A stretch of 64,000 nucleotides of DNA from Podarcis liolepis (lineage: Eukaryota), in the NCBI GenBank assembly GCA_965112155.1, contig OZ218109.1; one strand, written 5' to 3'. The notes beneath the pieces were generated by a model. The model made no database searches, was not told the DNA's origin, and saw only the letters and a program-made list of their open reading frames with translations. Shown here piece by piece: positions 18,078 to 30,824 of this stretch. A program made the position numbers and the translations under genes. The number at the start of each line of letters is the position of its first letter. Position 1 is the first letter of the stretch.

Positions 18078-18142
18078 GAGGCTTGCACTAAGAAGATCAG
18101 ATGTACAGGTTCAGCCCTTGAAAGTTTCCAATAGAAAATCAT
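18078..18142 (+). CDS. MPP7: MPP7 coding exon (HOOK N-part), (R)RLALRRSDVQVQPLKVSNRKS(S)
   Basis: Acceptor ttttatag, donor CAT|gtaagt. 65 nt, phase 2/1. The exon ends in a single T. Confidence 0.95.
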
Positions 18143-19498
18143 GTAAGTCTGTTTAGAAATCATATTACTTCATTCACACAAATATGGCTTGTATTAGCTC
18201 TTTTTAAGATATGGCGCTGGTATCTTAAGATATATCAGCAGGCCAAAACCTGTGATGCTGTAGGAATAGGATTTTCGTTAAAGAAAATTGTTTACCCCCG
18301 CTTCCGACATCAATACTTATGTAAAACCTATTCCCTACAGTGAATAAAATAATAAATATACCAATCTCTAATTATTGGAAGGGCATTCTTAATGACTCAC
18401 TGGGTATTTAAATACTACACAAAAGGGGACACATGTGAAGTCAGTGCTTTTTTCAGGCTCAACCACCTACTTTTGAAGCATAGTCCAACAATATCTGGAG
18501 GTTGTGTGAAGCTGCTTTGGAGTATGTTTTTAGAACATATCAATAAATATCATGCTGATATATGATCTGTTACCACTCATATGCTTATCAAATTTTCTGT
18601 CTGCTTTTCTTATTAGAACTGAATTGGACTTATAAGAAGTGGGTTTGATCCAAATTATGCAAAAACATTAAGGCATATGTTTTAAAATGTATCAAAAATA
18701 TTCTAGCAAGTACTTTTTCTGTGTGCCTAATTAGAATTATATCAAAAGCAAATGATGTGAAAGCACAGTATCTCTCATCATGGACTAAAAATAGCATGTT
18801 TGAAGGTTTCAGAGTTCTAGTTTAAAAAAAAAACACAGTAGTTCATTCTTCTATAGAACAAAGACAGTAACATTACTCTAAACCAAATCATTTTATTGGT
18901 ATACTTGAAGTTGGACAGCAAGATGATGAGCCACTTTCTGTGGGGTTTTGGAAAATTAATATAAAATGGTTGCATGGAATTATGTGTGTGTGTTGCGGGT
19001 CAGGAGCATGGAGAAGCAGTCATTTATATTTGTGAACTGGCTCTGTTTCTGACATAGGATAGCACTGGACTACATTTGCATGAAATTGGTGACATTTGTT
19101 ATATGGTGTAACTTATGCACGTGTCCTTAAACTTGTCATTCATTTGATGTAATATGTCTTCAAAAGAGAGCATGAACCATCAGTAATTAAAATCAGTTAG
19201 ACTAATTCTGGCCAAAACAGCTTCTTTCCAACAGAACCATGATTTTTACCATGGTAGTTTGCTTTTATATTTAAGCTATATCACATGTCTTCTCATTCAT
19301 ATGACTAATAATAATTTAATATTGTTAATCCATAATTAGCATTGTGTAATGGATAGGGTGGTTAATCTCTGAAAGACCTAGCTAAGTGTATAACCAAAAT
19401 AAAATAGTAATTTTGATATTAAATATAAACTGAATTATGTACTTTTTAAAATTTTCACTAAGTGTGAGAGAAGAAATATTTAATCACTGTCAAATATA

Positions 19499-19784
19499 CA
19501 GTGATACCTCGCAAGACGAATGCCTCGCAAGACAAAAAACTCGCTAGACGAAAGGGTTTTTTGTTTTTTGAGCTGCTTCGCAAGATGATTTTCCCTATGG
19601 GCTTGCTTCGCATGACGGAAACGTCTTGCAAGTTTGTTTCCTTTTTCTTAACACCGCTAATACAGTTGCGACTTGACTTCGAGGAGCAACTCATAGAATG
19701 CGGTGTGGTAGCCTTTTTTGAGGTTTTTAAAGACTTTGGTGATTTTTGAAGCTTTTCCAAAACTTTCCTGACACCGCACCACTG
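19499..19784. mobile_element. Tc1/mariner (Tigger-like) MITE with truncated right TIR
   Basis: TA|CAGTGATACCTCGCAAGACGAA...GCACCACTG|TA. The left half is shared with the element at 49984. Confidence 0.8.
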
Positions 19785-21814
19785 TATTTATATAGTTCAA
19801 TATCAATATCATGTGATTTAGTATGGTGTGCATTCAAGCAAGATGGAACCTATTTTATAATTTTGAGAATTAATTGTGCACAATTCAAATTTTTATGTGG
19901 CGCCCAAACACTGAAAGTAAAACTCATTTTGTCAAATTCTACACTGTAACTCCTTATACCACTATCTGTTTTGTCAGCAAGCCAAACACATCTTCACTCT
20001 TCTTTCAAACCTAGTATTCTTCCTGACATTTAGTGAGGAGTCTTCCTCTAATAATCCCTACTATTGCAAGGACAGCAGACTTTGACCTCACTTTTTATGA
20101 CTATTTGCAGTCCTAAATTATATAAAGTCAGTGTCATCTTGTCTTGGGTCACTTGCTGCTGTGGTGACATCATTAATACAGGCTTCATCTTTGCAGTCTG
20201 CGGTGTCATCAAACAGAAGAGTGCATTTGAAGAATTTCAGTATTTTTGCCTAAAAGTTATTCACTTAAAAAAATACATTAGCATTTTTTGTTTTTATACT
20301 TTCTCATGCAAATCTTTTTACGTACAAATTTTGTTAAATATTTTCATTATAGCTTGGAAATTCAATTGTATACCTTAAGATCTTTATACGTCCATGAAAA
20401 TCTTAGTGATCCTGCTTATGATAGTTTGTCAATTGATGCTCATTTATAAAATGGAGCTGCTGTGCATTGTGATGCAGGCCAGTGACTGAACTGAATGACT
20501 CCTGCTTTCCCCCAAATATACTGGATAGAGTCATGCATCTGTTATGCATAGCAAACGGCAAAGCAGTTGCATGTTCAACTAATAATGAAACAGATCCTTG
20601 ATATAAATCATCAGTTGTGTTCCAATTTACATTCAAGTAATTTGTGTTACTTCATCAGCCCAGTTCTTTTGTCAGTTTCCTTTCTGTGCATCTTACAACT
20701 ATATTTCTTTTGCGTGCTTAATTTTTTCTTTATCCATTCTAACCAAACTTGCCTTTCCATCTTAGAAAAATATATAAGAAAGTGGAACCACAATTATTCT
20801 TATTTGCAGTGTGGCATGCTCCGGTTCAGTACACACATGTACACAGCCTTTTTTCCTCCACCCCCAGTCAGCCAAGATTTTGTTTCAGTCACATTTTAGT
20901 AATTTTGTATTGTATATTGTTTTAAAATCTACTGTTTATTTTATTTTAATCTTGTCAAGTTGCTTTGAGATTTTCAATTGAAAGTGACTGAATATTCATT
21001 AACATAATATTGCTCATTGAGCATGCCCAGTCTTCAGTGTGCTGTTTCTTGGCTATTTCCTTCCATAATGCCCCCCCCCCATCTCCATTTTGTGCTGTTT
21101 TAGCTGTATGGGCTTGATATCTAAGAACTGAGATGGCTAACAGTATTTATAATTCATGCCAAATATAAGTAGGCAACGTTATAGAACTGAAATGTTAGAT
21201 ACTTTGGTTCACATCAAAGTAGCAGGTACCCACATCGGCGACTAATAATAATGCAACTTCATGGATTGCGCTCCATGCGGGAAGCTTTCTTGTTGATGTA
21301 GCCTCCAAAGGGGTCCAAGCATGCCAATGGAAATCTGGTCTCTCCTTGTGAATGCAAGGGGCTTTCATGGTAATGAGCTGGCCAAGTTTTGTGTTAACAG
21401 ATCTCACACACTGCTCATTTCATAAATGCAACACCCTTAATAGTTCAGGTGGGAAAATTTATCCTCATTGAAAAAATAAATTCTGAAGGAGGCTTTTCTT
21501 CCCCAGTAAGTATTTGTCCTCTTCTTCATTTCTTTCTCAGCTAAGCAACTAAGCTCTTCCTGGGTTGGTTCAAAGAAGGTGGGCTATGACAAATTTAACA
21601 GGGCCTATAATTTAATTCTTTCTTAACAGCGCAATCCAAAGTGTTTGGATTTGGCAGATCTTGGGCTTTCTTGGCTGAGAAGATAATGGTATTGTTCTGT
21701 AAGAGCAACTCTCTCATAATACATTGTATCAGTTGTAAAGAGCACATATATGAACTATTATTAATCCTTTGCCTCTTAAGAACGCATTCAAGTAGGCGTC
21801 CTGTCCTTTGTGAT

Positions 21815-21977
21815 CAGTGGCGTAGCGTGGGTTGTCAGCACCCGGGGCAAGGCAAGTAATTTGCGCCTCCTAACCCGTGGATTTGCGCCCCCTAACCCGT
21901 GGATTTGCGCCCCCTAACCCCCAGATGTTGCGGCCGGTGCGGCCGGCCCCCCCTGCACCCCCCACGCTACGCCACTG
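21815..21977. mobile_element. Young hAT-superfamily MITE
   Basis: Perfect 17-bp TIRs CAGTGGCGTAGCGTGGG / CCCACGCTACGCCACTG. Perfect 8-bp TSD TTTGTGAT (21807-21814 and 21978-21985). Internal 22-bp tandem repeats. Confidence 0.93.
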
Positions 21978-22272
21978 TTTGTGATTGCAACTTCCTTGTA
22001 TTGTAAAGGGACAAGAATCTGAATAACTACATGAATGTGCCCTTTAAAACTGATATGCATGTGTGTTGTGCCCTGATATCTGTATTTCATCAGAATCTAC
22101 CTGTGTAAAGTAATGATGCTTGATCAAGGAGCAATAAAAGTGGTACTAGCAGAAGTTGTGTCTTTGGTGGGAGGGGAGACTTTGATGGGCAAGCAGGCAT
22201 AGAAATGAGCCCAAAGAAAGTTTGTTCTAGTGCATTGTAAGTTGGCTTTGGGATGTGTCTAATAAACTAGGG

Positions 22273-22409
22273 CAGGGGTGGGGAGCCTGTCGCCCCCATA
22301 TGTCACTGAACTACAGTTCCCATCCTTCATGACCATTAGCCATACTGGCTAGGGCTGATGGGAATCAGAGTCCAGCAACATCTGGAGAACCTCAGGTTCC
22401 CTCCTTCTG
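22273..22409. mobile_element. Short hAT-type MITE (aactacagttcccatc family)
   Basis: caggggtggggagcctg...caggttccctccttctg termini with an internal hairpin module. Confidence 0.6.
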
Positions 22410-22417
22410 GGCTCAGA

Positions 22418-22614
22418 CAGAGCTTTCCAAACTGTGTGCCACGACACATTAGTGTGTCAGCTGCAATGTGTAGGTGTGTCACACAAACACTCCCTGTGCT
22501 CTTATAAGGGGTTAGTTTAACCTCTGGTTTGCTAGTAAAACTGAATTACTACGTCTCAAAATGATGCATGTCTAAAAAGAGTGTCACCAATATGAAAAAG
22601 TTTGGAAAGCTCTG
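22418..22614. mobile_element. hAT-type MITE
   Basis: 16-bp TIRs CAGAGCTTTCCAAACT / AGTTTGGAAAGCTCTG. Imperfect 8-bp TSD (ggctcaga / ggctagag). Confidence 0.8.
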
Positions 22615-23060
22615 GGCTAGAGGAAGTCTCTGGATGAAAGCAACAACCTGTAGAAAACTTAACTTCAACTTAAGAGTGTAACCATTTCAAAATTACAATT
22701 GAAAACCTAGTGACTCTTACTTATGATGCTAAGCAGAACATGACTAGTTAATGTGTTGTTTTTTCATCCCAGGGCTGGTGCAAACCTTTCTGTCTCTTAA
22801 ACAGTGTTAGGGGAACATAGCCTTTGCATACGCACCAAAAAACTTTACACATTTTGAAAGTGAGGTTCTGTCATTTCCCACTCCCAAAAAAGAAATTGGG
22901 GTACAGGCTTTTGCAGCAAAACGCTGAACGTGCCGTGCATCATACTTCTGCAAAATATGCTCTTAACCTGTTCTTTATATTACTCAGCTCTGCTTTTCCC
23001 ATTTTATTATGTGCTGAATATAATGTAAATCATGTCTGCTTGTCTTTTGGCTGTTCTAAG

Positions 23061-23081
23061 CTGAGGAAACAGTTGAGTGTG
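23061..23081 (+). CDS. MPP7: Putative alternative 21-nt microexon of the MPP7 HOOK region, (S)EETVEC
   Basis: Pyrimidine tract tgcttgtcttttggctgttctaag, exon CTGAGGAAACAGTTGAGTGTG, donor gtaggt. Phase 1/1, frame-preserving. Same length and position as the short exon recalled in paralogs MPP3 (YDQPCDK) and MPP4 (DEETFES). Confidence 0.72.
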
Positions 23082-23172
23082 GTAGGTGTTTCCCCCCCTT
23101 TTATTCTTCCATTATGTCTTCAGTCCATATAATCACTTTGCATCCTATTTTTCCCCCTTTTGCGCTTCTCAG

Positions 23173-23184
23173 AGGAAATTGAAG
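23173..23184 (+). CDS. MPP7: Putative alternative 12-nt microexon of the MPP7 HOOK region, (E)EIE
   Basis: Long pyrimidine tract tttttccccctttTGCgcttctcag, exon AGGAAATTGAAG, donor gtacat. Phase 1/1. Lies 91 nt after the 21-nt exon. Resembles the recalled MPP4 segment EELS. Confidence 0.62.
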
Positions 23185-23893
23185 GTACATGTACAAGTTT
23201 CCCTGCTGGGCTGCAAGTGATGGCTTAAAAACTAAGTATTCTAGGTCATCACTGACTTAGAGGCAATTAGAAAATAATCCATCTAGATAGCAGTATATGT
23301 AGTCACAACAGCCAGTTGCTTTGTTGTTGTGGGAATTGTTGTTCCAGTCCTGAGAATCGTGGTAGTAGAAGACTGTGAACATGTTGCTTTCTGCACGTAG
23401 TTCCTACAGCACAGTACTGGCATGTGTGCATGAAGATTCCTGTGGGGTAAGGCACAGGGATCCACATGTGTTATCCCATTGTCAGATGTGATTTCTTCCT
23501 TTGTATTTTTCCTTCTCCTCACATAGCAGGAATTTTGGGGGCCCAACATAACAGATCTGCCTGTTTCTGCACATGGGTCAAGTATGCAGAACAGAAGCGA
23601 ATGTGTGCTAAAACCTCTGAATGTTAGCAAAGTAACATAACTGAAAAAAGCAGATATGTTAACACAAGACATTTCCATGGAGCTAAAGATGATGTCAGTC
23701 CTATTGCATGGCTCTAATAGATTATCTTTCTTAAATTCAAACTTTGACACTGAATAAAGTGGATCTTTTCCAGTCATTAGGGGTGCAATTTTGGAACACA
23801 GCTTGACAGATGCTTTACTGCTGTGGTGTCAATCTTTGGGGGACTTTTCACTTGCAGCATACAGTTGTAGCTCATTGATTTCTTTAGATAGGT

Positions 23894-23935
23894 TATCTAT
23901 CTATCTATCTATCTATCTGTCTGTCTATCTATCTG
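23894..23935. repeat. (TATC/TGTC)n tetranucleotide microsatellite
   Basis: Read directly from the sequence. Confidence 0.9.
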
Positions 23936-24429
23936 TATATACCCAAAAGCTGTAAAGTATTTTGTTAGACATTTGGTATATTAAAATAGGCACCAATACT
24001 ATTTTATACCTAAGAAGTTATATTCATTAAAAATACCCTTTCTGTCCGATCCATTGAGCCAAATACAAAAACTCCTGATATTCTTTGTAGATTTCTTTAC
24101 CTTTGTGTTTCAGCTGTTGTATATTTTATCCTACATTAAAATATAAAGTAGAACACCTTTTAAAATCACTTCTTTATTTTCTGTCATGAATAAGGCAATA
24201 AAACAGTGAAAAGTTAAATATGCATGTTGCTGTACTCCAAAATCTCTTGCTCAACTTCAGAACAACACAGTGATTTATTTTTAAGCAGTGGCATATTGAA
24301 GGCTTTTTATGCTGTGCTTTCTGCAGTTGTCATTTTTAAGTAACTCTTCTTTTGCATTCATGGCTGGGCATCTAACTATTCTGCTTTATTTCTTGGCTTT
24401 TGTTCTGTACGCTTTTACACTTCATCCAG

Positions 24430-24471
24430 AGGAAGCTGAATGTGCTGGTCACAACAGTGGAGCCCACATAG
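24430..24471 (+). CDS. MPP7: Putative alternative 42-nt exon of the MPP7 HOOK region, (E)EAECAGHNSGAHI(A)
   Basis: Branch-like ctaac at 24372, long pyrimidine tract ending ttcatccag, donor TAG|gtgagc. Phase 1/1. Aligns with recalled MPP3 ETCDCEGYLKGHYVA-GLRRSFRL, directly before GFRRSFRL. Confidence 0.78.
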   Translation, partial: RKLNVLVTTVEPT

Positions 24472-24787
24472 GTGAGCAGTTGCTTACAAAAGACTCTCTT
24501 TCTTTCTCAGCTTTTTCCTGGATGGCTACAGAGTTTGCAGGTAATGGGCATCACTGCATGCTATGAATCTGCTAGATTAAAAAATGGCTCACTGGATTTG
24601 ACACAAAGGATCTGCATCCTAACCGCAACATATGTTACTAACATTGAAATATAGAATGCATTGAAATGCTACCTTGAATATGAGGAAATAATTTACTTGG
24701 GCAGAATTTGCAAAGAAATTTAAATACTTGTTCTGGACAAAATGTTAGGCTGGCTATATTCCATCTGACTACATTATTTTTCTATCA

Positions 24788-25030
24788 CAGTATTCTTCAA
24801 TCTTGGGTCCCCAGATGATATTGAACTACAACTCCCATAAACCCTTATCATTGACTAAGCTGATAGGAATTGTGAAAGTTGTAACCTCGTGACTTAGTGT
24901 AGGGATAGCCATTGTGGTACCTGACACTTGTTGTGGGCTACAATTTTCATCATCCCTGGCCATTGGCCGCTCTGACTTGAGTTGGTGGCTCCATAACATC
25001 TAGAGGGTACCACGTTGGCTACTGCTGACT
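24788..25030. mobile_element. Two partial short hAT-type MITE copies (aactacaactcccat family)
   Basis: ccagatg...aactacaactcccat...gttgta and gctacaattttcatcatccctggccattggc...aacatctagaggg modules, similar to 35855. Confidence 0.55.
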
Positions 25031-25659
25031 TACAGGGAAGTAAGTTAGTACTGTTGGATAGCTGGGATTGCTTTCTTGTCAATGAGCCAAGTAATAATAC
25101 CATGGACTGGCTCATCTTTGCTCACCTATTCTTGAAGTAGTTTACTGGTAATTCCTTAGAAGATGCTACACAAGAACCATTGTAAGTTGAACATACCATA
25201 TTAGGTTTTCTTTATTCTTCAAGGAAGGGATGTGGGAAGAGAACACAAATGATTGGTAAGAATTGGCCCATATTGGGGTATAAAATGTGGTAGAATAGGG
25301 AAGGAGGTTGAGATCCTGGTGATGCAGGAACTACTCAGGGTAAATCAGCAGCACAAGAGTAGGTGGAAACTAATTGAGGGCATGCTACATAATTTATTAA
25401 TATATCCATGTCACATGTTTTATTAAAGGGGAAGGTGACACTGCAGATAGGTAGACTGGTAGAGAAGTTTGTGTGTAACCATGCTTCAAGATAGATTTTA
25501 GAAGCTGTGGTCTAAATCTGTATGCCTGACATTTGCATGCCACAGGAGGCCTACCAATCCAAACAGAATAGCTGTCACTGTTAAAGCCCTTCATGATTTG
25601 GGACCTCAGTAGCTGAATGATATTTTCTTCCCAGTTACATTTATCTGTGCCTTGAAATA

Positions 25660-25914
25660 CAGTGGTACCTTTGTTTACATAGTTAATTCGTTCCGGAGGT
25701 CCGTTCTTAACCTGAAACTGTTCTTAACTTGAAGCACCACTTTAGCTAATGGGGCCTCCTGCTGCTGCGCTGCCTTTGTGCAATTTCTGTTCTCATCCTG
25801 AAGCAAAGTTCTTAACCTGAGGTACTATTTCTGGGTTAGCGGAGTCTGTAACCTGAAGCGTATGTAACCTGAAGCGTATGTAACCTGAAGCGTATGTAAC
25901 CCGAGGTACCACTG
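25660..25914. mobile_element. Tc1/mariner (Tigger-like) MITE
   Basis: TA|CAGTGGTACCT...AGGTACCACTG|TA. Internal 16-bp tandem repeat tgtaacctgaagcgta x3. Confidence 0.87.
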
Positions 25915-28900
25915 TAATCATCTGAAACTCTTCTCCTAGTACCCCTTGCATACTGAGGTGCGGAGAGAATAGTCACAAGGGAAAAGGCCTTCTGGTTGTG
26001 GAATGCCAGAGAGGCCCACCTGACACACATTTTAATGCCTTTCTGGTGCCAGGCAAAGAACTTTTTTTATTTTCCCAGGCATTTTAAAATTGATTATATT
26101 TATTAATTGAAATAATTAATTCTTTAATCTTTGCATGTTGCTGTGATTTTAGCATGGTCATTTTAGTTCTGTGAAATTCATTTTGGGAGCTCTGTCTTAC
26201 TGATTATTGCTGTGATTTCTAATCTTGTGGTCTCTGTTTTATGGTTGTTTTATTTACTTTAATGATTTCTTGTTTTGTTTAAATAGTTTTTGATCATTGA
26301 CATCACTCAGGGAACTGCTGTTGGGAGACTGATGAATAATAGCAGTTCCACTGATGACATTCAAATTAGCAACTTTAATGCCAGACCTTGCTAGTTGATC
26401 TCTTCTGTTGAAATATATATTTTCTTTAACTTAGTATAATTGAGTAGGATGGATTATCAACTTTAACTCACACTTTTTGTCATACAGAATAAAAATGCAT
26501 AACTAGGCAGTTATCATAAGATTATTCTGAGTAGAGCATGGGATGTGTGGAGATACGCCATAATTCATAGATAATGAGAGGGGGAGAAAACTCCATCACT
26601 ACCTTGGCCTTCCTCCTACATACCTCTACCAGCAGGGCTCTATGAGCCTCCATGTAGGTGCTACTTACATACCCTGAGGTATCTGCAGTCAGCTTGTTCA
26701 GTTTGGTATCACTCTTGGCCCAGTATGTTCACTGATCTCCACAACAAGAATCTGAAGCAGGTTAACAAACGTTAGCTTAGAAGGGAACCTTGCGAGTGCC
26801 AATGCAGATGCACTCTAAGCTAAGGCTTGGAAGGATACTTTTGCTGGAAAGTTGGAGGAAGAAGGGGAGACCATTGGGTCACTCCCAGTTTCTTAACTGT
26901 GGATACAGGGTGGAAGTGTTATAGCTTCATTCGGTTTTCATGAAATGTCATTTCTGGGATTCATAATGTGAAACTACAGTGGTATCAGACATACAGAATA
27001 AAAACTATTTAAAAGCCCTAGTCATATTTCAGGAATTGGGTGTACTGTTATAAGGTGGCCTCAGAAATGAACTTCCTACAAACTGGAGTTGTCCAGAAAT
27101 AATTAACAATGTTTTTACTGTGCTAGTCAATGATATGGTGTTGGTTTAACAGAGAACTTGCTATTTGTCTATAATGTATGTCAAACTGTATTAAATTTGA
27201 CACGCAAAGCATGTATATCATTGTAGATTGTGAGCCTGTGGGACGGGGCTTTACCATTTAGGTCTAAATGATACCTACTTTTGTGAGATGTTTGCTGTTG
27301 ATACTTATTGGAAACAATGGCTTGTCTTTTTCTCTATATACATTGAAGACAAAGGGTTGTCTTCAATGTATATAGAGGAAAAAGTGCATACAATTTTGAA
27401 AAACAGTGATTGGTATTAAATGGGTAGCAGTGAAGGACAGAAGTTGAACTAATTTTCATGTAGTTTAATGGTTCAAACCATGTAGTTAAACTATTTTGTT
27501 GGTAGTAAACTGTTTGCATACTATTAAAAACAATAATTGGTTTCACCCTTTTGGCGAAAACTATTTAAATAGCTATTTATTAGCATACTTAAAAACTCTA
27601 TAAACTCAATATAAATACCAGTTTTAGTCTCCAAGAGGAATGGTGTGAGCCATTACCAGAAGAGGGGGTGTTGCTCCCTTTTGTTTCTACAGCTAGTTGC
27701 TAGGAACATGTTCAGTGTGTAGCATTTCTAAAGTGGTTGATTGCACTTGGAATAGTCTAACACTTTAACCTGACCAGGAAGAGGGGATTAGCATTAGGGT
27801 GGTGGAAAGTCCTGTTCAGTGTTTGCTAATTTGTTACAATCTAGTTTGACCATGAAATGGGATCAATGCAAAGGGTTCTGCACCCAGGAGCTGGCTTAAT
27901 TTTCAGTGCCTTTCACTGATGATCTGTGGAACAAAACAGAGGGAAGTTTTTGCTTTCCCTCAAGTATGTACTTCTAGAGGGGAGCCTAAACCTTTTGAGC
28001 AGCAGCTATTCTTTTGTAGAGTAAGGAGGGCATTCAGATACCCTCCAGGAGTGCCTTTCCCACCAGCAGGAAACAGGGTTAGCTTGCAAAGTTGACTCCT
28101 CTATTGGAAGGAGCTACCAGGCTGCCATAAGCCCCATGGAACCAGTGAAGGCCTTATTTGGTGCCCCAGCTTTCATTTTTCAAAAGTACATGTCTCTACC
28201 CCTCCTAGGAAAAAATTATAATCAAAGTGTGCAGGTACCCTTCTAAGCACCAGTAATTTCTGTGAAATGATTAGCCAGTGAGTGAAGTGAGAGCTGTGAT
28301 TGATAAGTGAGCTGTTTTGACACCAGGCAGTGGGAAAACTTGGGGCTCCAAATAGCTGCTGTCCCCCTTTAGTGCCCTTTTCCTGCTTCTGTCTTATATC
28401 CTAGTCTTTGGATTCACCCAGTTGCTGCTCTGTTTGCTTCACTTTGCTTCCTGCCATCCATATAGAGCAGCTGCTTCAGAAACTCTTTGAAAATGTGGGA
28501 GATGAAATCTGGGGGTCCTTCCCATTGCTGCTTTGTTTGTTTTGCTGCCTATTGGAATGTAGAGTGGATGGCTGCTTGATAGCTGCCTCAGTAGAATACT
28601 GGGGGGTGGGGGAAGGTTATGACAACCATTTGTTGTTTCTGCTGCATACTGTACAATGGGGGTTGTTCCAAAGTTGTTTGGGTGAGGGCAGTTCAGAGGC
28701 TTCATATTGATGGTGATAATAATTATCACATTTTTCCTGGTTCTTTTTTATGAGTGAGCAAGTGCATAAGTATTACTACTACTACTACTACTACCACCAT
28801 CACCTTTTCTCTGCTTGTTCTCAAGTGTTGTTGTTTTGCCAGGGGTGGGACATTTCCAAAGAATCATTCTCATCATCACCTTTTCCTCTTGCCTGGCACA

Positions 28901-30653
28901 CATCAAGGATTGTTCCCAAGTTGTTTGGGAAAGGGAGTGCTCAGTGCAAATGCAGAAAAACTATTACTGCCATCTCTTCATACACCCCTTATTTCAACAG
29001 CTACTCTGATGAGTTTTTTAAATGACTTTCCTTTGCATTTTCCTTGCATTTCTATTTGTTGTTGTTGTTGATATTGTTGTTTATTAAATTTGTATACCAC
29101 CCTTCATCTGACAATCACAGCTTTAAATTTTTGCCTATTCAGGTGTACGGCTGGCTGTAGTGATTCAGGATTCTTCCTGCTTTCAGTTATCTTTTAATTT
29201 CTAGCTCTGATCTACAGCAGCACGTCAGAAGTATTGTATTCTCTGGCAGATCAGCATGCTGGGATGCAGTTGTGACTGGAGTTCAGGGTGGGAGTGATAG
29301 AATTCTTAGATGTTTATCTGTGTAACTCATTCATTTAAGGGACAAGACATTCCTGTGGTTCTATTAAAAGCAGTCACTATTGACTCTGAGCACTACCATT
29401 TTGTCTCACTGCTGCTCCCATGGTGTTATGAAGGTTCTGGTCATACCAATAGTGCACCAGAGGATGCAAAGTATTGAAACATAAAGAAGTATCAAGTGGC
29501 TTGAATTAAAGGTGATCATACTGATACATTGGGCTTTTCTAGGCAACATAAAGGCAAGCAGATCTTGGTAAAGACAAGCAACAACTCAGTGAAGATCTGT
29601 CTCAGCAGGCAAGGAGGCATGAGATCTATTTCCCATCATAAGAAGCCTGTCCTGGATTGCTCAGAGTAGAACATCTGACTCAAGTGACAAACACAACTGT
29701 AGACTGGCTGAGCTATGTTGTTTAATATATTGACTGTTTCTCTCCGTAATTATATTTTATCTTATGCCCCATTTAATGATGTATGTGTTATCAGAACAAA
29801 GCATATTGGTGTTGCAATGATTAAAATTGATTTTTAATGTAATTCAAGACTGTGAAGCTACTAATAGGCATAGCTGTCAGCGTTTCCCTTTTTTAAAGGG
29901 GAAATTTCCTTATTCCGAATAGGATTCCTTGCAAGAAAAGGGGAAAGTTGACAGCTATGACTAATAGGTTTTTAGAAACATTCATCGCTGTTGTTGACTT
30001 TCTTTGAACCAGTGTGGATGTCAAATATATGATCTCAGCTGGGAACATATTTAGATAAAGAATGAGTGTCTTCTGTTGATTCTGCAAGCACTTTTTAAAA
30101 TGATCGGTATCTGGGAGTTGGGGTAATTATCAGTATTTTGGGGGTAGGGATATCAGCAAATTTTGCAAGTCTGTATTACAAATGTGACATTTCCTCATAT
30201 TTCTGTTCTCAGTGCTTAACAGAGATCTAGCCTGCTATACCAATATGATGTTTTTGTTTTTTTAAAAAATACATCATTCCTAATTTTCACCAGCAACCCA
30301 TACACTTTGAAATTGGCACCTTTTGAATAAAAATAATTTGGTAATGTGATTAGGTCACAATCCTATCTAAAAACAGGGGAACTTCAAAAGTAAACACAAA
30401 ACAATGGAGATTAAAAAGACGTCAAATTTCACCCCATATGGCTCCCATATGCTCTTGCATGAGCCTAATCAAATATATATGGAAAACAATTTGGACTTTG
30501 AATTTGGTCCTTCAAGATATAAGGAAGAAAAATTACTAAGTAACAAAAGTAACAGATGCCCATATGAAGGAGCGTTTGTTGCAGATGGGCTACTGGCTAG
30601 TCTGATGACAGTAACCCCTGCTTCTGCTTTTTTTTTAAATCTCGTAACTACAG

Positions 30654-30824
30654 CTGGTTTCAGGAGGAGTTTTCGTCTCAGCAGAAAAGATAGAAAAACA
30701 AACAAGACTATGTATGAATGCAAGAAGAGTGATCAGTACGATACAGCAGATGTCCCAACTTACGAAGAAGTAGCAAAGTATAGACGACAGCCCAATGAGA
30801 AATACAGACTTGTTGTCTTGGTTG
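30654..30824 (+). CDS. MPP7: MPP7 coding exon (HOOK to GUK start), [56 protein letters not shown](G)
   Basis: Acceptor aactacag, donor TTG|gtaagt. 171 nt, phase 1/1. TYEEV motif. Confidence 0.98.

What the first reader, a model, noticed from the sequence alone, without database searches (positions are those of the whole stretch)
23061..24471. Hidden three-exon cassette cluster (21 + 12 + 42 nt) in the MPP7 HOOK intron
Seen in the sequence: three short exon-like segments inside the 12.5-kb intron, each with a pyrimidine tract, AG acceptor and GT donor. All are phase 1/1 and multiples of 3, matching the phase of the flanking exons. Joined, they give ...[38 protein letters not shown]... From recall, canonical human MPP7 reads NRKSSGFRRS with no insert, while paralogs carry segments at this position (MPP3 YDQPCDKETCDCEGYLKGHYVAGLRRSFRL, MPP4 [32 protein letters not shown]). 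Inference: this is an ancestral MPP3/4/7 microexon module retained in this lizard MPP7. It would place 9 Glu and 2 Cys next to the polybasic HOOK motif and could switch SH3-GUK or HOOK ligand binding in a tissue-specific way. It may already appear in predicted isoforms; I cannot check that here.
Basis: partly seen in the sequence, partly recalled or inferred. Interest (0 to 1): 0.85.

Follow-up and report, generated by a model that had tools for sequence, protein, structure and literature searches.

The report
Known alternative microexons in lizard MPP7
The three tiny exon-like segments are real, very old alternative exons of the scaffold gene MPP7 that add an acidic stretch to a flexible linker, but they are already in public gene annotations of lizards, birds, mammals, frogs and fish, so this is an ordinary, known feature.

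Summary
Observation confirmed. Segments A (23061-23081, 21 nt), B (23173-23184, 12 nt) and C (24430-24471, 42 nt) are AG/GT-bounded, open and phase 1/1. They lie between two MPP7 exons (18078-18142 and 30654-30824).

They are not chance. Exon-wise translations match inserts in annotated MPP7 isoforms from sharks to mammals. A+C is letter-identical to Podarcis muralis/raffonei isoform X1 (597 aa). A+B+C matches gecko isoform X2 (600 aa) except for the last residues. MPP3 carries the homologous A+C-like segment at the same junction.

So "ancestral module" is supported, but "hidden" and "retained in this lizard" are not. Mammals, primates included, have the exons too. A mouse islet study lists a 21-nt Mpp7 microexon as neural-up.

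Only B is missing from the lacertid annotations I saw. Its intact sequence and splice sites (chance about 3e-6) argue that it is still used.

D starts 39 nt after C, so the two probably exclude each other.

The scan's own notes hold only this same stretch.

Function (charge tuning of the disordered HOOK linker) is inferred, not shown. Interest is low.

The parts
18078..18142 (+). Constitutive MPP7 exon upstream of the cluster (encodes ...RLALRRSDVQVQPLKVSNRKS, ends with a lone T, phase 1)
   Evidence: tblastn to Podarcis MPP7
23061..23081 (+). Cassette microexon A, 21 nt, S-EETVEC. It starts with CT, so the junction codon T|CT gives Ser (Tyr in non-squamates)
   Evidence: Peptide identical to Podarcis muralis/raffonei X1 (P0118/P0222). 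A alone is annotated in Anolis X2 (P0215). Same length as the mouse 21-nt neural-up Mpp7 microexon
23082..23172 (+). 91-nt intron between A and B, with a pyrimidine tract and a TGC at 23161-23163 (12 nt upstream of B)
23173..23184 (+). Cassette microexon B, 12 nt, (E)EIE. It starts with AG, so joining it directly to the upstream exon makes T|AG, a stop
   Evidence: EEIE/EEIK/EEFE/EEME sits at this position in gecko, turtle, bird, mammal, frog, paddlefish and shark isoforms. Chance expectation 3e-6. Not seen in any lacertid isoform retrieved
24430..24471 (+). Cassette exon C, 42 nt, (E)EAECAGHNSGAHI(A). It starts with AG, so it also gives T|AG if A is skipped
   Evidence: tblastn 14/14 identity to P0118 residues 325-338. 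Annotated in Podarcis X1
24472..24510 (+). 39-nt spacer between the donor of C and the acceptor of D. It is shorter than usual vertebrate introns, so C and D are probably mutually exclusive (inference)
   Evidence: No retrieved isoform carries both C and D
24511..24540 (+). Cassette exon D, 30 nt, S-FSWMATEFA-A, phase 1/1.
   Evidence: Found by the crude splice scan. Peptide equals the insert of the 586-aa isoforms of Podarcis muralis, P. raffonei, Zootoca vivipara and Lacerta agilis (P0214 cluster). tblastn
24555..24560 (+). TGCATG (RBFOX-type motif) 15 nt downstream of the donor of D and 84 nt downstream of the donor of C. A lead only
   Evidence: 12 TGCATG in the intron against about 2.9 expected from composition, 4 of them in 22900-24700
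30654..30824 (+). Constitutive MPP7 exon downstream ([24 protein letters not shown]...YRLVVLV), carrying the polybasic HOOK motif (10 K/R in the first 26 residues)

Best explanation
Segments A, B and C are the lizard orthologues of a conserved set of alternative cassette exons of MPP7. MPP7 is a membrane-associated guanylate kinase scaffold. The exons lie in the intron that splits the HOOK linker between the SH3 and guanylate-kinase-like domains. A fourth, lacertid-annotated exon D belongs to the same cluster.

Shown: the exons sit at the exact junction where annotated isoforms of other vertebrates carry the same peptides, and all are phase 1/1. A+C and D-only isoforms are annotated in lacertids, and A+B+C in a gecko. 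Transcripts with and without the A+B+C block exist in a salamander.

Shown from the sequence: the upstream exon ends in T, while B and C begin with AG. Either one joined directly to the upstream exon therefore creates a TAG stop. Only A, D or the downstream exon can follow the upstream exon productively.

Inferred: C and D exclude each other because only 39 nt separate them. B is still used in this lizard because its 12 nt and both splice sites are intact.

Inferred mechanism: the exons add 7, 11, 21 or 25 mostly acidic residues (up to 9 Glu and 2 Cys), or a 10-residue hydrophobic alternative (D). These go into a disordered linker directly in front of the polybasic [15 protein letters not shown] motif. 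That would tune the motif's net charge and its access to partners (FERM/4.1-type proteins, calmodulin, acidic lipids) or the SH3-GUK intramolecular contact. Inclusion is probably enriched in neural or neuroendocrine cells, as reported for the mouse 21-nt Mpp7 microexon.
For: Sequence and phases. Homologous inserts: of the retrieved isoforms my script could parse, 31 had a 26-residue junction-to-junction stretch (A+B+C), 10 had 25, 8 had 22 (A+C), 34 had 14 (C' only) and 2 had 12 (A+B). The alignment runs from shark to mammal. Podarcis X1 has SEETVECEEAECAGHNSGAHIA, equal to the window's A and C. Gecko X2 has SEETVEC-EEIE-EEAECAGHNSG.... D equals the insert of the lacertid 586-aa isoforms. MPP3 shows the same junction. 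Salamander transcript contigs of 4-6 kb occur with and without the block. The mouse 21-nt Mpp7 microexon has PSI 0.13 vs 0.40 and is listed NEURAL-UP (PMC8395343 Table S2). TGC lies 12 nt upstream of B. The insert lies between SH3 (231-294) and GuK (392-584), in a stretch with pLDDT below 50 (residues 287-376). Precedent for splice inserts in MAGUK HOOK linkers: SAP97/hDLG I2/I3/I4/I5 and CASK exon 23L (PMC9307800, PMC8208546).
Against: No lacertid isoform with B was retrieved, and predicted isoforms are models, not proofs. The acceptor of A and the donor of B score low on my crude matrix. The functional part is inferred from charge and from analogy with other MAGUKs. The AlphaFold model is poor overall (mean pLDDT 62), and low confidence is only indirect evidence of disorder. 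The mouse 21-nt event was matched to A by length only, not by coordinates.
Confidence: 0.82

Rival explanations
1. A, C and D are used in lacertids, but B is a decaying relic that the spliceosome no longer recognises in this lineage. The cluster would then work as a two-exon (A+C) or one-exon (D) cassette.
For: None of the 17 lacertid isoforms retrieved contains EEIE. Anolis, Pogona, Crotalus and Paroedura isoforms in the hit lists also lack B. The donor of B has the weakest score of the four (5.8).
Against: The 12 nt still encode EEIE exactly as in gecko, turtles and birds. They have an intact CAG acceptor, a strong pyrimidine tract (acceptor score 7.3, the best of the four), a GT donor and a TGC at -12. 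A chance match is about 3e-6. Annotation pipelines and ordinary aligners often miss 12-nt exons.
Confidence: 0.3
2. The segments are chance exon-like strings in a long intron, with no biological role.
For: 495 open AG..GT phase-1 segments exist in the intron. Two other segments that pass the crude splice score (22417-22473, 28209-28226) have no homologue support.
Against: A and C are identical to annotated Podarcis isoforms. B and the whole block match gecko, turtle, bird, mammal, frog and fish isoforms at the same junction.
Confidence: 0.01
3. The main role of B and C is as poison exons. If either is spliced directly to the upstream exon it gives T|AG, so inclusion without A would send the mRNA to nonsense-mediated decay and lower MPP7 output rather than make a protein variant.
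For: The upstream exon ends in T, and B and C start with AG. Squamate exon C begins (G)AG GAA or (G)AA GCT, where other vertebrates use an alternative acceptor giving T|AT = Tyr for a productive C-only isoform. No squamate C-only isoform was seen among the hits.
Against: The coding sequence of B and C is conserved at the peptide level across vertebrates, and productive A+C and A+B+C isoforms are annotated. A poison exon needs no conserved peptide.
Confidence: 0.1

Closest known systems
MPP7 isoform X1 of Podarcis muralis / P. raffonei (597 aa; XP_028607220.1, XP_053266571.1; UniProt A0A670J7G2)
   Same: Same gene, same junction. The insert SEETVEC-EEAECAGHNSGAHIA is identical to the window's A and C.
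   Different: It lacks B. The window's other exons are close to those of P. muralis and P. raffonei, but the tblastn matches run past exon ends, so the species cannot be named from them.
MPP7 isoform X2 of the gecko Sphaerodactylus townsendi (600 aa; XP_048366530.1)
   Different: The last residues of C differ (VLLA vs AHIA). The gecko also has variants with shifted acceptors of C (X1, X3-X6).
Lacertid MPP7 586-aa isoforms (P. muralis XP_077792931.1, Zootoca XP_034986307.1, Lacerta agilis XP_033021951.1)
   Same: Same intron and same phase. The insert SFSWMATEFAA equals window exon D.
   Different: A different exon, hydrophobic rather than acidic. Among the hits I retrieved it was seen only in lacertids.
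Mouse Mpp7 21-nt microexon (chr18:7430395-7430415, 'NEURAL-UP', PMC8395343 Table S2) and mouse predicted isoforms X5/X6 (XP_017173497.1, XP_006526392.1)
   Same: Same gene. A 21-nt alternatively included exon, with isoforms carrying EETVEC-EEIK-(E)DTGHDGNNSGTYIA.
   Different: The 21-nt event was matched to A by length only. Mouse X5/X6 start from a different N-terminus.
MPP3 HOOK segment (YDQSSDKEDCDCEGYFNGQYIA before GLRRSFRL)
   Same: A paralogue with an A+C-like acidic, Cys-containing segment at the same junction. The same Ser (skipped) / Tyr (included) junction codon and the same closing Ala point to equal phases.
   Different: No B-like piece was seen. The sequence is only loosely similar. 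Exon boundaries were inferred from protein isoforms, not from DNA.
Splice inserts I2/I3/I4/I5 in the HOOK linker of SAP97/hDLG (DLG1), and CASK exon 23L
   Same: Works alike: alternative exons in the disordered SH3-GUK linker of a MAGUK. In SAP97 they change localisation and binding of protein 4.1 and calmodulin (PMC9307800, PMC8208546).
   Different: The exons are not homologous. The DLG1 inserts described there leave the HOOK net positive, whereas the MPP7 inserts are acidic. No functional data on the MPP7 inserts were found.

Membership tests
Annotated MPP7 HOOK cassette exons (A/B/C of vertebrate MPP7 isoforms) | Located between the exon ending ...NRKS(S) and the exon starting GFRRSFRL | tested here: met
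   isoform alignment
Annotated MPP7 HOOK cassette exons (A/B/C of vertebrate MPP7 isoforms) | Peptides EETVEC / EEIE / (E)xAECAGHNSGxxI(A) with lengths of 7 / 4 / 14 codons, all phase 1/1 | tested here: met
   A and C are identical to Podarcis X1, and B is identical to gecko, turtle and bird EEIE
Annotated MPP7 HOOK cassette exons (A/B/C of vertebrate MPP7 isoforms) | Usable splice sites | tested here: met
   AG/GT at all ends. Crude scores fall within the range of the constitutive exons
Annotated MPP7 HOOK cassette exons (A/B/C of vertebrate MPP7 isoforms) | Inclusion in mRNA of this species | not testable with these tools
No spliced lizard fragments turned up in the protein collection
SRRM4/nSR100-type neural microexons | Length of 27 nt or less and a multiple of 3 | tested here: met
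   A is 21 nt and B is 12 nt. C (42 nt) and D (30 nt) are above the usual limit
SRRM4/nSR100-type neural microexons | UGC motif close upstream of the 3' splice site (established knowledge of the family, from memory) | tested here: inconclusive
   TGC at -12 of B but at -24 of A. A single trinucleotide is weak evidence
SRRM4/nSR100-type neural microexons | Higher inclusion in neural or neuroendocrine tissue and dependence on SRRM4 | not tested
   Only a mouse table lists the 21-nt Mpp7 exon as NEURAL-UP. Nothing is available for this lizard
MPP3/MPP4/MPP7 shared ancestral HOOK module | Homologous segment at the same junction and phase in the paralogues | tested here: inconclusive
   MPP3: met at protein level. 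MPP4: no sequence was retrieved, so not tested. The amphioxus MPP7-like protein P0066 shows no such insert in the one isoform seen

The most novel reading that the evidence does not exclude
In lacertid lizards the old MPP7 HOOK module has been rewired in three ways. (1) A has become an obligatory gate, because B and C give T|AG without it. The productive C-only isoform of other vertebrates is lost: the Asp codon GAT, whose AT completes a Tyr codon with the upstream T, is replaced in squamates. (2) The unannotated 12-nt exon B is still used. (3) A lineage-restricted 30-nt exon D, 39 nt after C, excludes C sterically. The linker would then switch between an acidic state (A, A+B, A+C, A+B+C) and a hydrophobic state (D) in front of the polybasic motif.
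Probability: 0.3. Interest if true: 0.4.

Novelty: already known. Interest (0 to 1): 0.22.

Why it matters
The practical result is a correction: this is not a hidden exon cluster. It is a well-conserved alternative-splicing module that public annotation already holds for the same lizard genus and for most vertebrate groups.

Three modest points remain of interest. The module is as old as jawed vertebrates and is shared with MPP3. In the papers I could search, nobody has tested what the acidic inserts do to the MPP7 HOOK linker. The lacertid locus also has small lineage-specific twists: dependence on A, the unannotated exon B, and the extra exon D. These could be settled with one RT-PCR. For genome annotation, B is an example of a 12-nt exon that pipelines tend to miss.

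Tried and rejected
(1) Reads. The look-up of sequencing runs listed four RNA runs of a close relative (X21-X24). The crude acceptor score of C (repeated locally) does use some of those letters.

No DNA-level conservation profile could be made.

(3) A third protein search for short spliced fragments (finch model P0001, residues 48-118) returned only intron read-through ORFs and skipped forms, none from lizards with A, B or C.

(4) MPP4 homology: no MPP4 sequence was among the hits, and the candidates turned out to be MPP7-like proteins of fish and amphioxus. Left untested.

(5) Literature: no paper on MPP7 HOOK splice variants was found beyond one mouse table.

(6) The AlphaFold model gave only low confidence for the linker, and no solved structure covers it. 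Neither tells how the insert acts.

(7) TGCATG enrichment is intron-wide, not specific to the cluster, so I keep it as a lead only.

All searches used one exon by reference or database protein ids.

(9) Chance explanation rejected (see rival explanations).
Full report
**1. What is in the sequence**

The window carries most of an MPP7 gene on the + strand. A local tblastn of lacertid MPP7 proteins places residues about 45-542 on exons between 6.9 kb and 40.2 kb. The finding lies in the 12.5-kb intron between exon 18078-18142 and exon 30654-30824.
- Exon 18078-18142 encodes ...QPLKVSNRKS and ends with a lone T.
- Exon 30654-30824 begins CT GGT TTC..., which reads [26 protein letters not shown]....

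- A: 23061-23081, 21 nt.
- B: 23173-23184, 12 nt.
- C: 24430-24471, 42 nt.

Each has an AG acceptor, a GT donor and a pyrimidine-rich upstream stretch. Each is open and in phase 1/1. Read exon by exon they give EETVEC, EIE and EAECAGHNSGAHI. The junction codons are Ser (T|CT), Glu (G|AG), Glu (G|AG) and Ala (G|CT).

All comparisons used single exons by reference or database proteins.

**2. Is it more than chance?**

Splice-site shape alone is weak evidence.
- The intron holds 495 open AG..GT phase-1 segments of 6-60 nt.
- With a crude splice matrix (frequencies from general knowledge, good for ranking only), only five pass 4 bits at both ends. B and C are two of them.
- A has a weak acceptor score (0.5), but so does the genuine downstream exon (0.1). 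All four cassette exons fall within the range of the window's constitutive exons.

Homology settles the matter.
- I ran phmmer with the downstream exon (window:30656-30823) against 1.8 billion representatives, and two word-index searches seeded with database MPP7 proteins.
- These returned a large set of annotated MPP7 isoforms. I read each one at this junction.

**3. What the homologues show**

Annotated isoforms fall into clear classes at exactly this junction. The lengths below run from the junction residue (Ser or Tyr) to the Ala before GFRRS. The counts cover the isoforms my script could parse.

| Class | Example insert | Exons | Count | Where |
|---|---|---|---|---|
| 26 (or 25) residues | YEETVEC-EEIE-(E)DAECAGxNSGTYIA | A+B+C | 31 + 10 | turtles, crocodilians, birds, marsupials, placentals, frogs, salamander |
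| 22 residues | SEETVEC-EEAECAGHNSGAHIA | A+C | 8 | squamates, pig, burrowing toad (Rhinophrynus) |
| 14 residues | YAECAG... | C from an acceptor 3 nt further in | 34 | turtles, crocodilians, birds, mammals |
| 12 residues | YEETVEC-EEIE-A | A+B | 2 | marsupials |
| 1 residue | S | none | 5 | frogs, one bat |

Isoforms the script could not parse, read by eye, fit the same classes. A+C also occurs in Anolis, gar, tarpon, white shark, bowfin and a second bat. A+B also occurs in a monkey and a mole.

Further points from the same data:
- The aligned block runs from catshark (YEESLES-EEFE-DAEYGDLVSGLYIA) and paddlefish to mammals.
- Podarcis muralis and P. raffonei isoform X1 (597 aa) read SEETVECEEAECAGHNSGAHIA. 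This is letter for letter the window's A plus C (tblastn 14/14 for C).
- Gecko Sphaerodactylus townsendi isoform X2 (600 aa) reads SEETVEC-EEIE-EEAECAGHNSGVLLA, which is the full A+B+C arrangement.
- Primates (Carlito X1, Cebus X3/X4, Microcebus) and mouse (X5/X6) have predicted isoforms with the inserts.
- Transcript-length contigs (4.2-5.8 kb, complete ORFs) of one salamander exist both with the A+B+C block and without it. This is RNA-level evidence of alternative use in another vertebrate.
- A mouse islet study lists a 21-nt Mpp7 microexon with PSI 0.13 vs 0.40, classed NEURAL-UP and 'not annotated' in its reference (PMC8395343, Table S2). I matched this event to A by length only.

MPP3 carries KKPV-YDQSSDKEDCDCEGYFNGQYIA-GLRRSFRL. 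Shorter MPP3 forms read KKPVS-GLRRSFRL. This is the same Ser/Tyr junction switch with the same closing Ala, which implies equal positions and phases.

**4.

My crude scan also flagged 24511-24540 (30 nt, FSWMATEFA). This is a real annotated exon.
- The 586-aa isoforms of Podarcis muralis (two annotation releases, plus a UniProt entry A0A670J4X2 carrying the same sequence), P. raffonei, Zootoca vivipara and Lacerta agilis all read NRKS-SFSWMATEFAA-GFRRS.
- I call it D. Its acceptor lies only 39 nt after the donor of C.
- That is shorter than ordinary vertebrate introns, so C and D most likely cannot both be spliced in. This is an inference, but no retrieved isoform has both.
- Among the hits I saw, D occurs only in lacertids.

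**5. Anatomy and built-in rules (from the sequence)**

- The upstream exon ends in T.
- A, D and the downstream exon begin with CT, giving Ser.
- B and C begin with AG, giving TAG, a stop.
- So B and C are productive only behind an exon that ends in G, which in practice means behind A. This agrees with the scan's overlapping note s1-847468.

Other vertebrates escape this rule for C. They use an acceptor 3 nt further in, which gives T|AT = Tyr; this is the common 14-residue class. Squamate isoforms have Glu where the others have Asp (EEAEC vs EDAEC). None of the squamate isoforms I retrieved is C-only.

Regulatory hints:
- The A-B intron is 91 nt.
- There is a TGC 12 nt upstream of B. That is the position typical of SRRM4-dependent microexons (family knowledge from memory).
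- TGCATG occurs 12 times in the intron against about 2.9 expected from composition. Four of these are in the cluster, and one lies 15 nt after the donor of D. These are leads, not evidence.
- Finch and rattlesnake gene models that read through the intron upstream of C agree in 16 of the last 20 codons and then diverge. This points to a conserved intronic element of about 70 nt before C in sauropsids.

**6. How it probably works**

Location of the insert:
- Pfam places SH3 at 231-294 and the guanylate-kinase-like domain at 392-584 of the gecko A+B+C isoform.
- The insert (about residues 314-342) lies in the HOOK linker between them.
- An AlphaFold2 model built on a 62-sequence alignment gives pLDDT below 50 for residues 287-376, while the GuK domain reaches 85-90. 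The overall model is weak (mean 62), so this only suggests disorder.
- No solved structure covers this linker. The closest entries, PALS1/MPP5 4WSI and 7M4R, align from residue 374 on.

Charge:
- The first 26 residues of the downstream exon carry 10 Lys/Arg and 3 acidic residues.
- A+B+C adds 9 Glu directly in front of them.

My best reading is that the exons tune the charge and accessibility of the polybasic HOOK motif, and thereby its partners or the SH3-GUK contact. D offers a non-acidic alternative. This is inference by analogy:
- In SAP97/hDLG, alternative HOOK inserts change localisation and binding of protein 4.1 and calmodulin (PMC9307800).
- CASK has an alternative exon at the start of its hook region (PMC8208546).
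- I found no experimental work on the MPP7 inserts.

**7. What could not be done**

- RNA evidence in this species was not obtainable.
- Afterwards I sent none of those letters to any search tool and masked them in scripts. The local splice score of C does use some of them.
- A search for short spliced fragments found none from lizards.
- Hence the use of B in lacertids rests on conservation. The 16-nt pattern (splice dinucleotides plus the EEIE codons) is expected 3e-6 times by chance in the A-C interval.

**8. Verdict**

- The reading 'ancestral module shared with MPP3' is supported.
- 'Hidden' and 'retained in this lizard' are not supported. A and C are annotated in the same genus, A+B+C in a gecko, and the module in nearly every vertebrate group, mammals included.
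- Novelty: already known.
- What remains mildly new is that B is unannotated in lacertids, that lacertids have an extra exon D placed 39 nt after C, and that squamates seem to have lost the productive C-only form.
- The scan's earlier notes contain only this same stretch. It was not found before on other DNA.

Noticed in passing
It equals the insert of the 586-aa MPP7 isoforms annotated in Podarcis muralis, P. raffonei, Zootoca vivipara and Lacerta agilis. Among the hits retrieved it was seen only in lacertids.
   Followed up: yes
window 24472-24510: Only 39 nt separate the donor of C from the acceptor of D. That is too short for an ordinary intron, so C and D are probably mutually exclusive. 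No retrieved isoform has both.
   Followed up: partly
window 18142 / 23173 / 24430: The upstream exon ends in T, and B and C start with AG, so skipping A while including B or C makes a TAG stop. Non-squamates avoid this for C with an acceptor 3 nt further in (T|AT = Tyr). Squamate isoforms have Glu instead of Asp there, and no C-only isoform was seen.
   Followed up: partly
finch model P0001 and rattlesnake model P0206 (intron just upstream of exon C): Two gene models that read through the intron before C agree in 16 of the last 20 codons and then diverge. This suggests a conserved intronic element of about 70 nt upstream of C in sauropsids.
   Followed up: partly
window 18143-30653, e.g. 23427, 23705, 24221, 24555: TGCATG (RBFOX-type motif) occurs 12 times in the intron against about 2.9 expected from base composition. 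One copy lies 15 nt after the donor of D.
   Followed up: partly
window 23889-23936: A (TATC)n microsatellite, with TGTC variants, in the intron between B and C.
   Followed up: no
window 22417-22473 and 28209-28226: Two further phase-1/1 open AG..GT segments pass the crude splice score, but no homologue or annotated isoform supports them. Probably chance.
   Followed up: partly
proteins P0143, P0150, P0195 (marmot, mole-rat, false killer whale): Some mammalian MPP7 isoforms carry an extra ...DAVCATA piece after C (32-residue class). This suggests one more small cassette exon in mammals. I did not look for it in the lizard.
   Followed up: no
proteins P0013, P0070 (mouse Mpp7 isoforms X6, X5): These 363/364-aa predicted isoforms start with an unrelated N-terminus and join straight into A+B+C. 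This would be consistent with an internal start in this intron that yields a HOOK-GUK-only protein.
   Followed up: no
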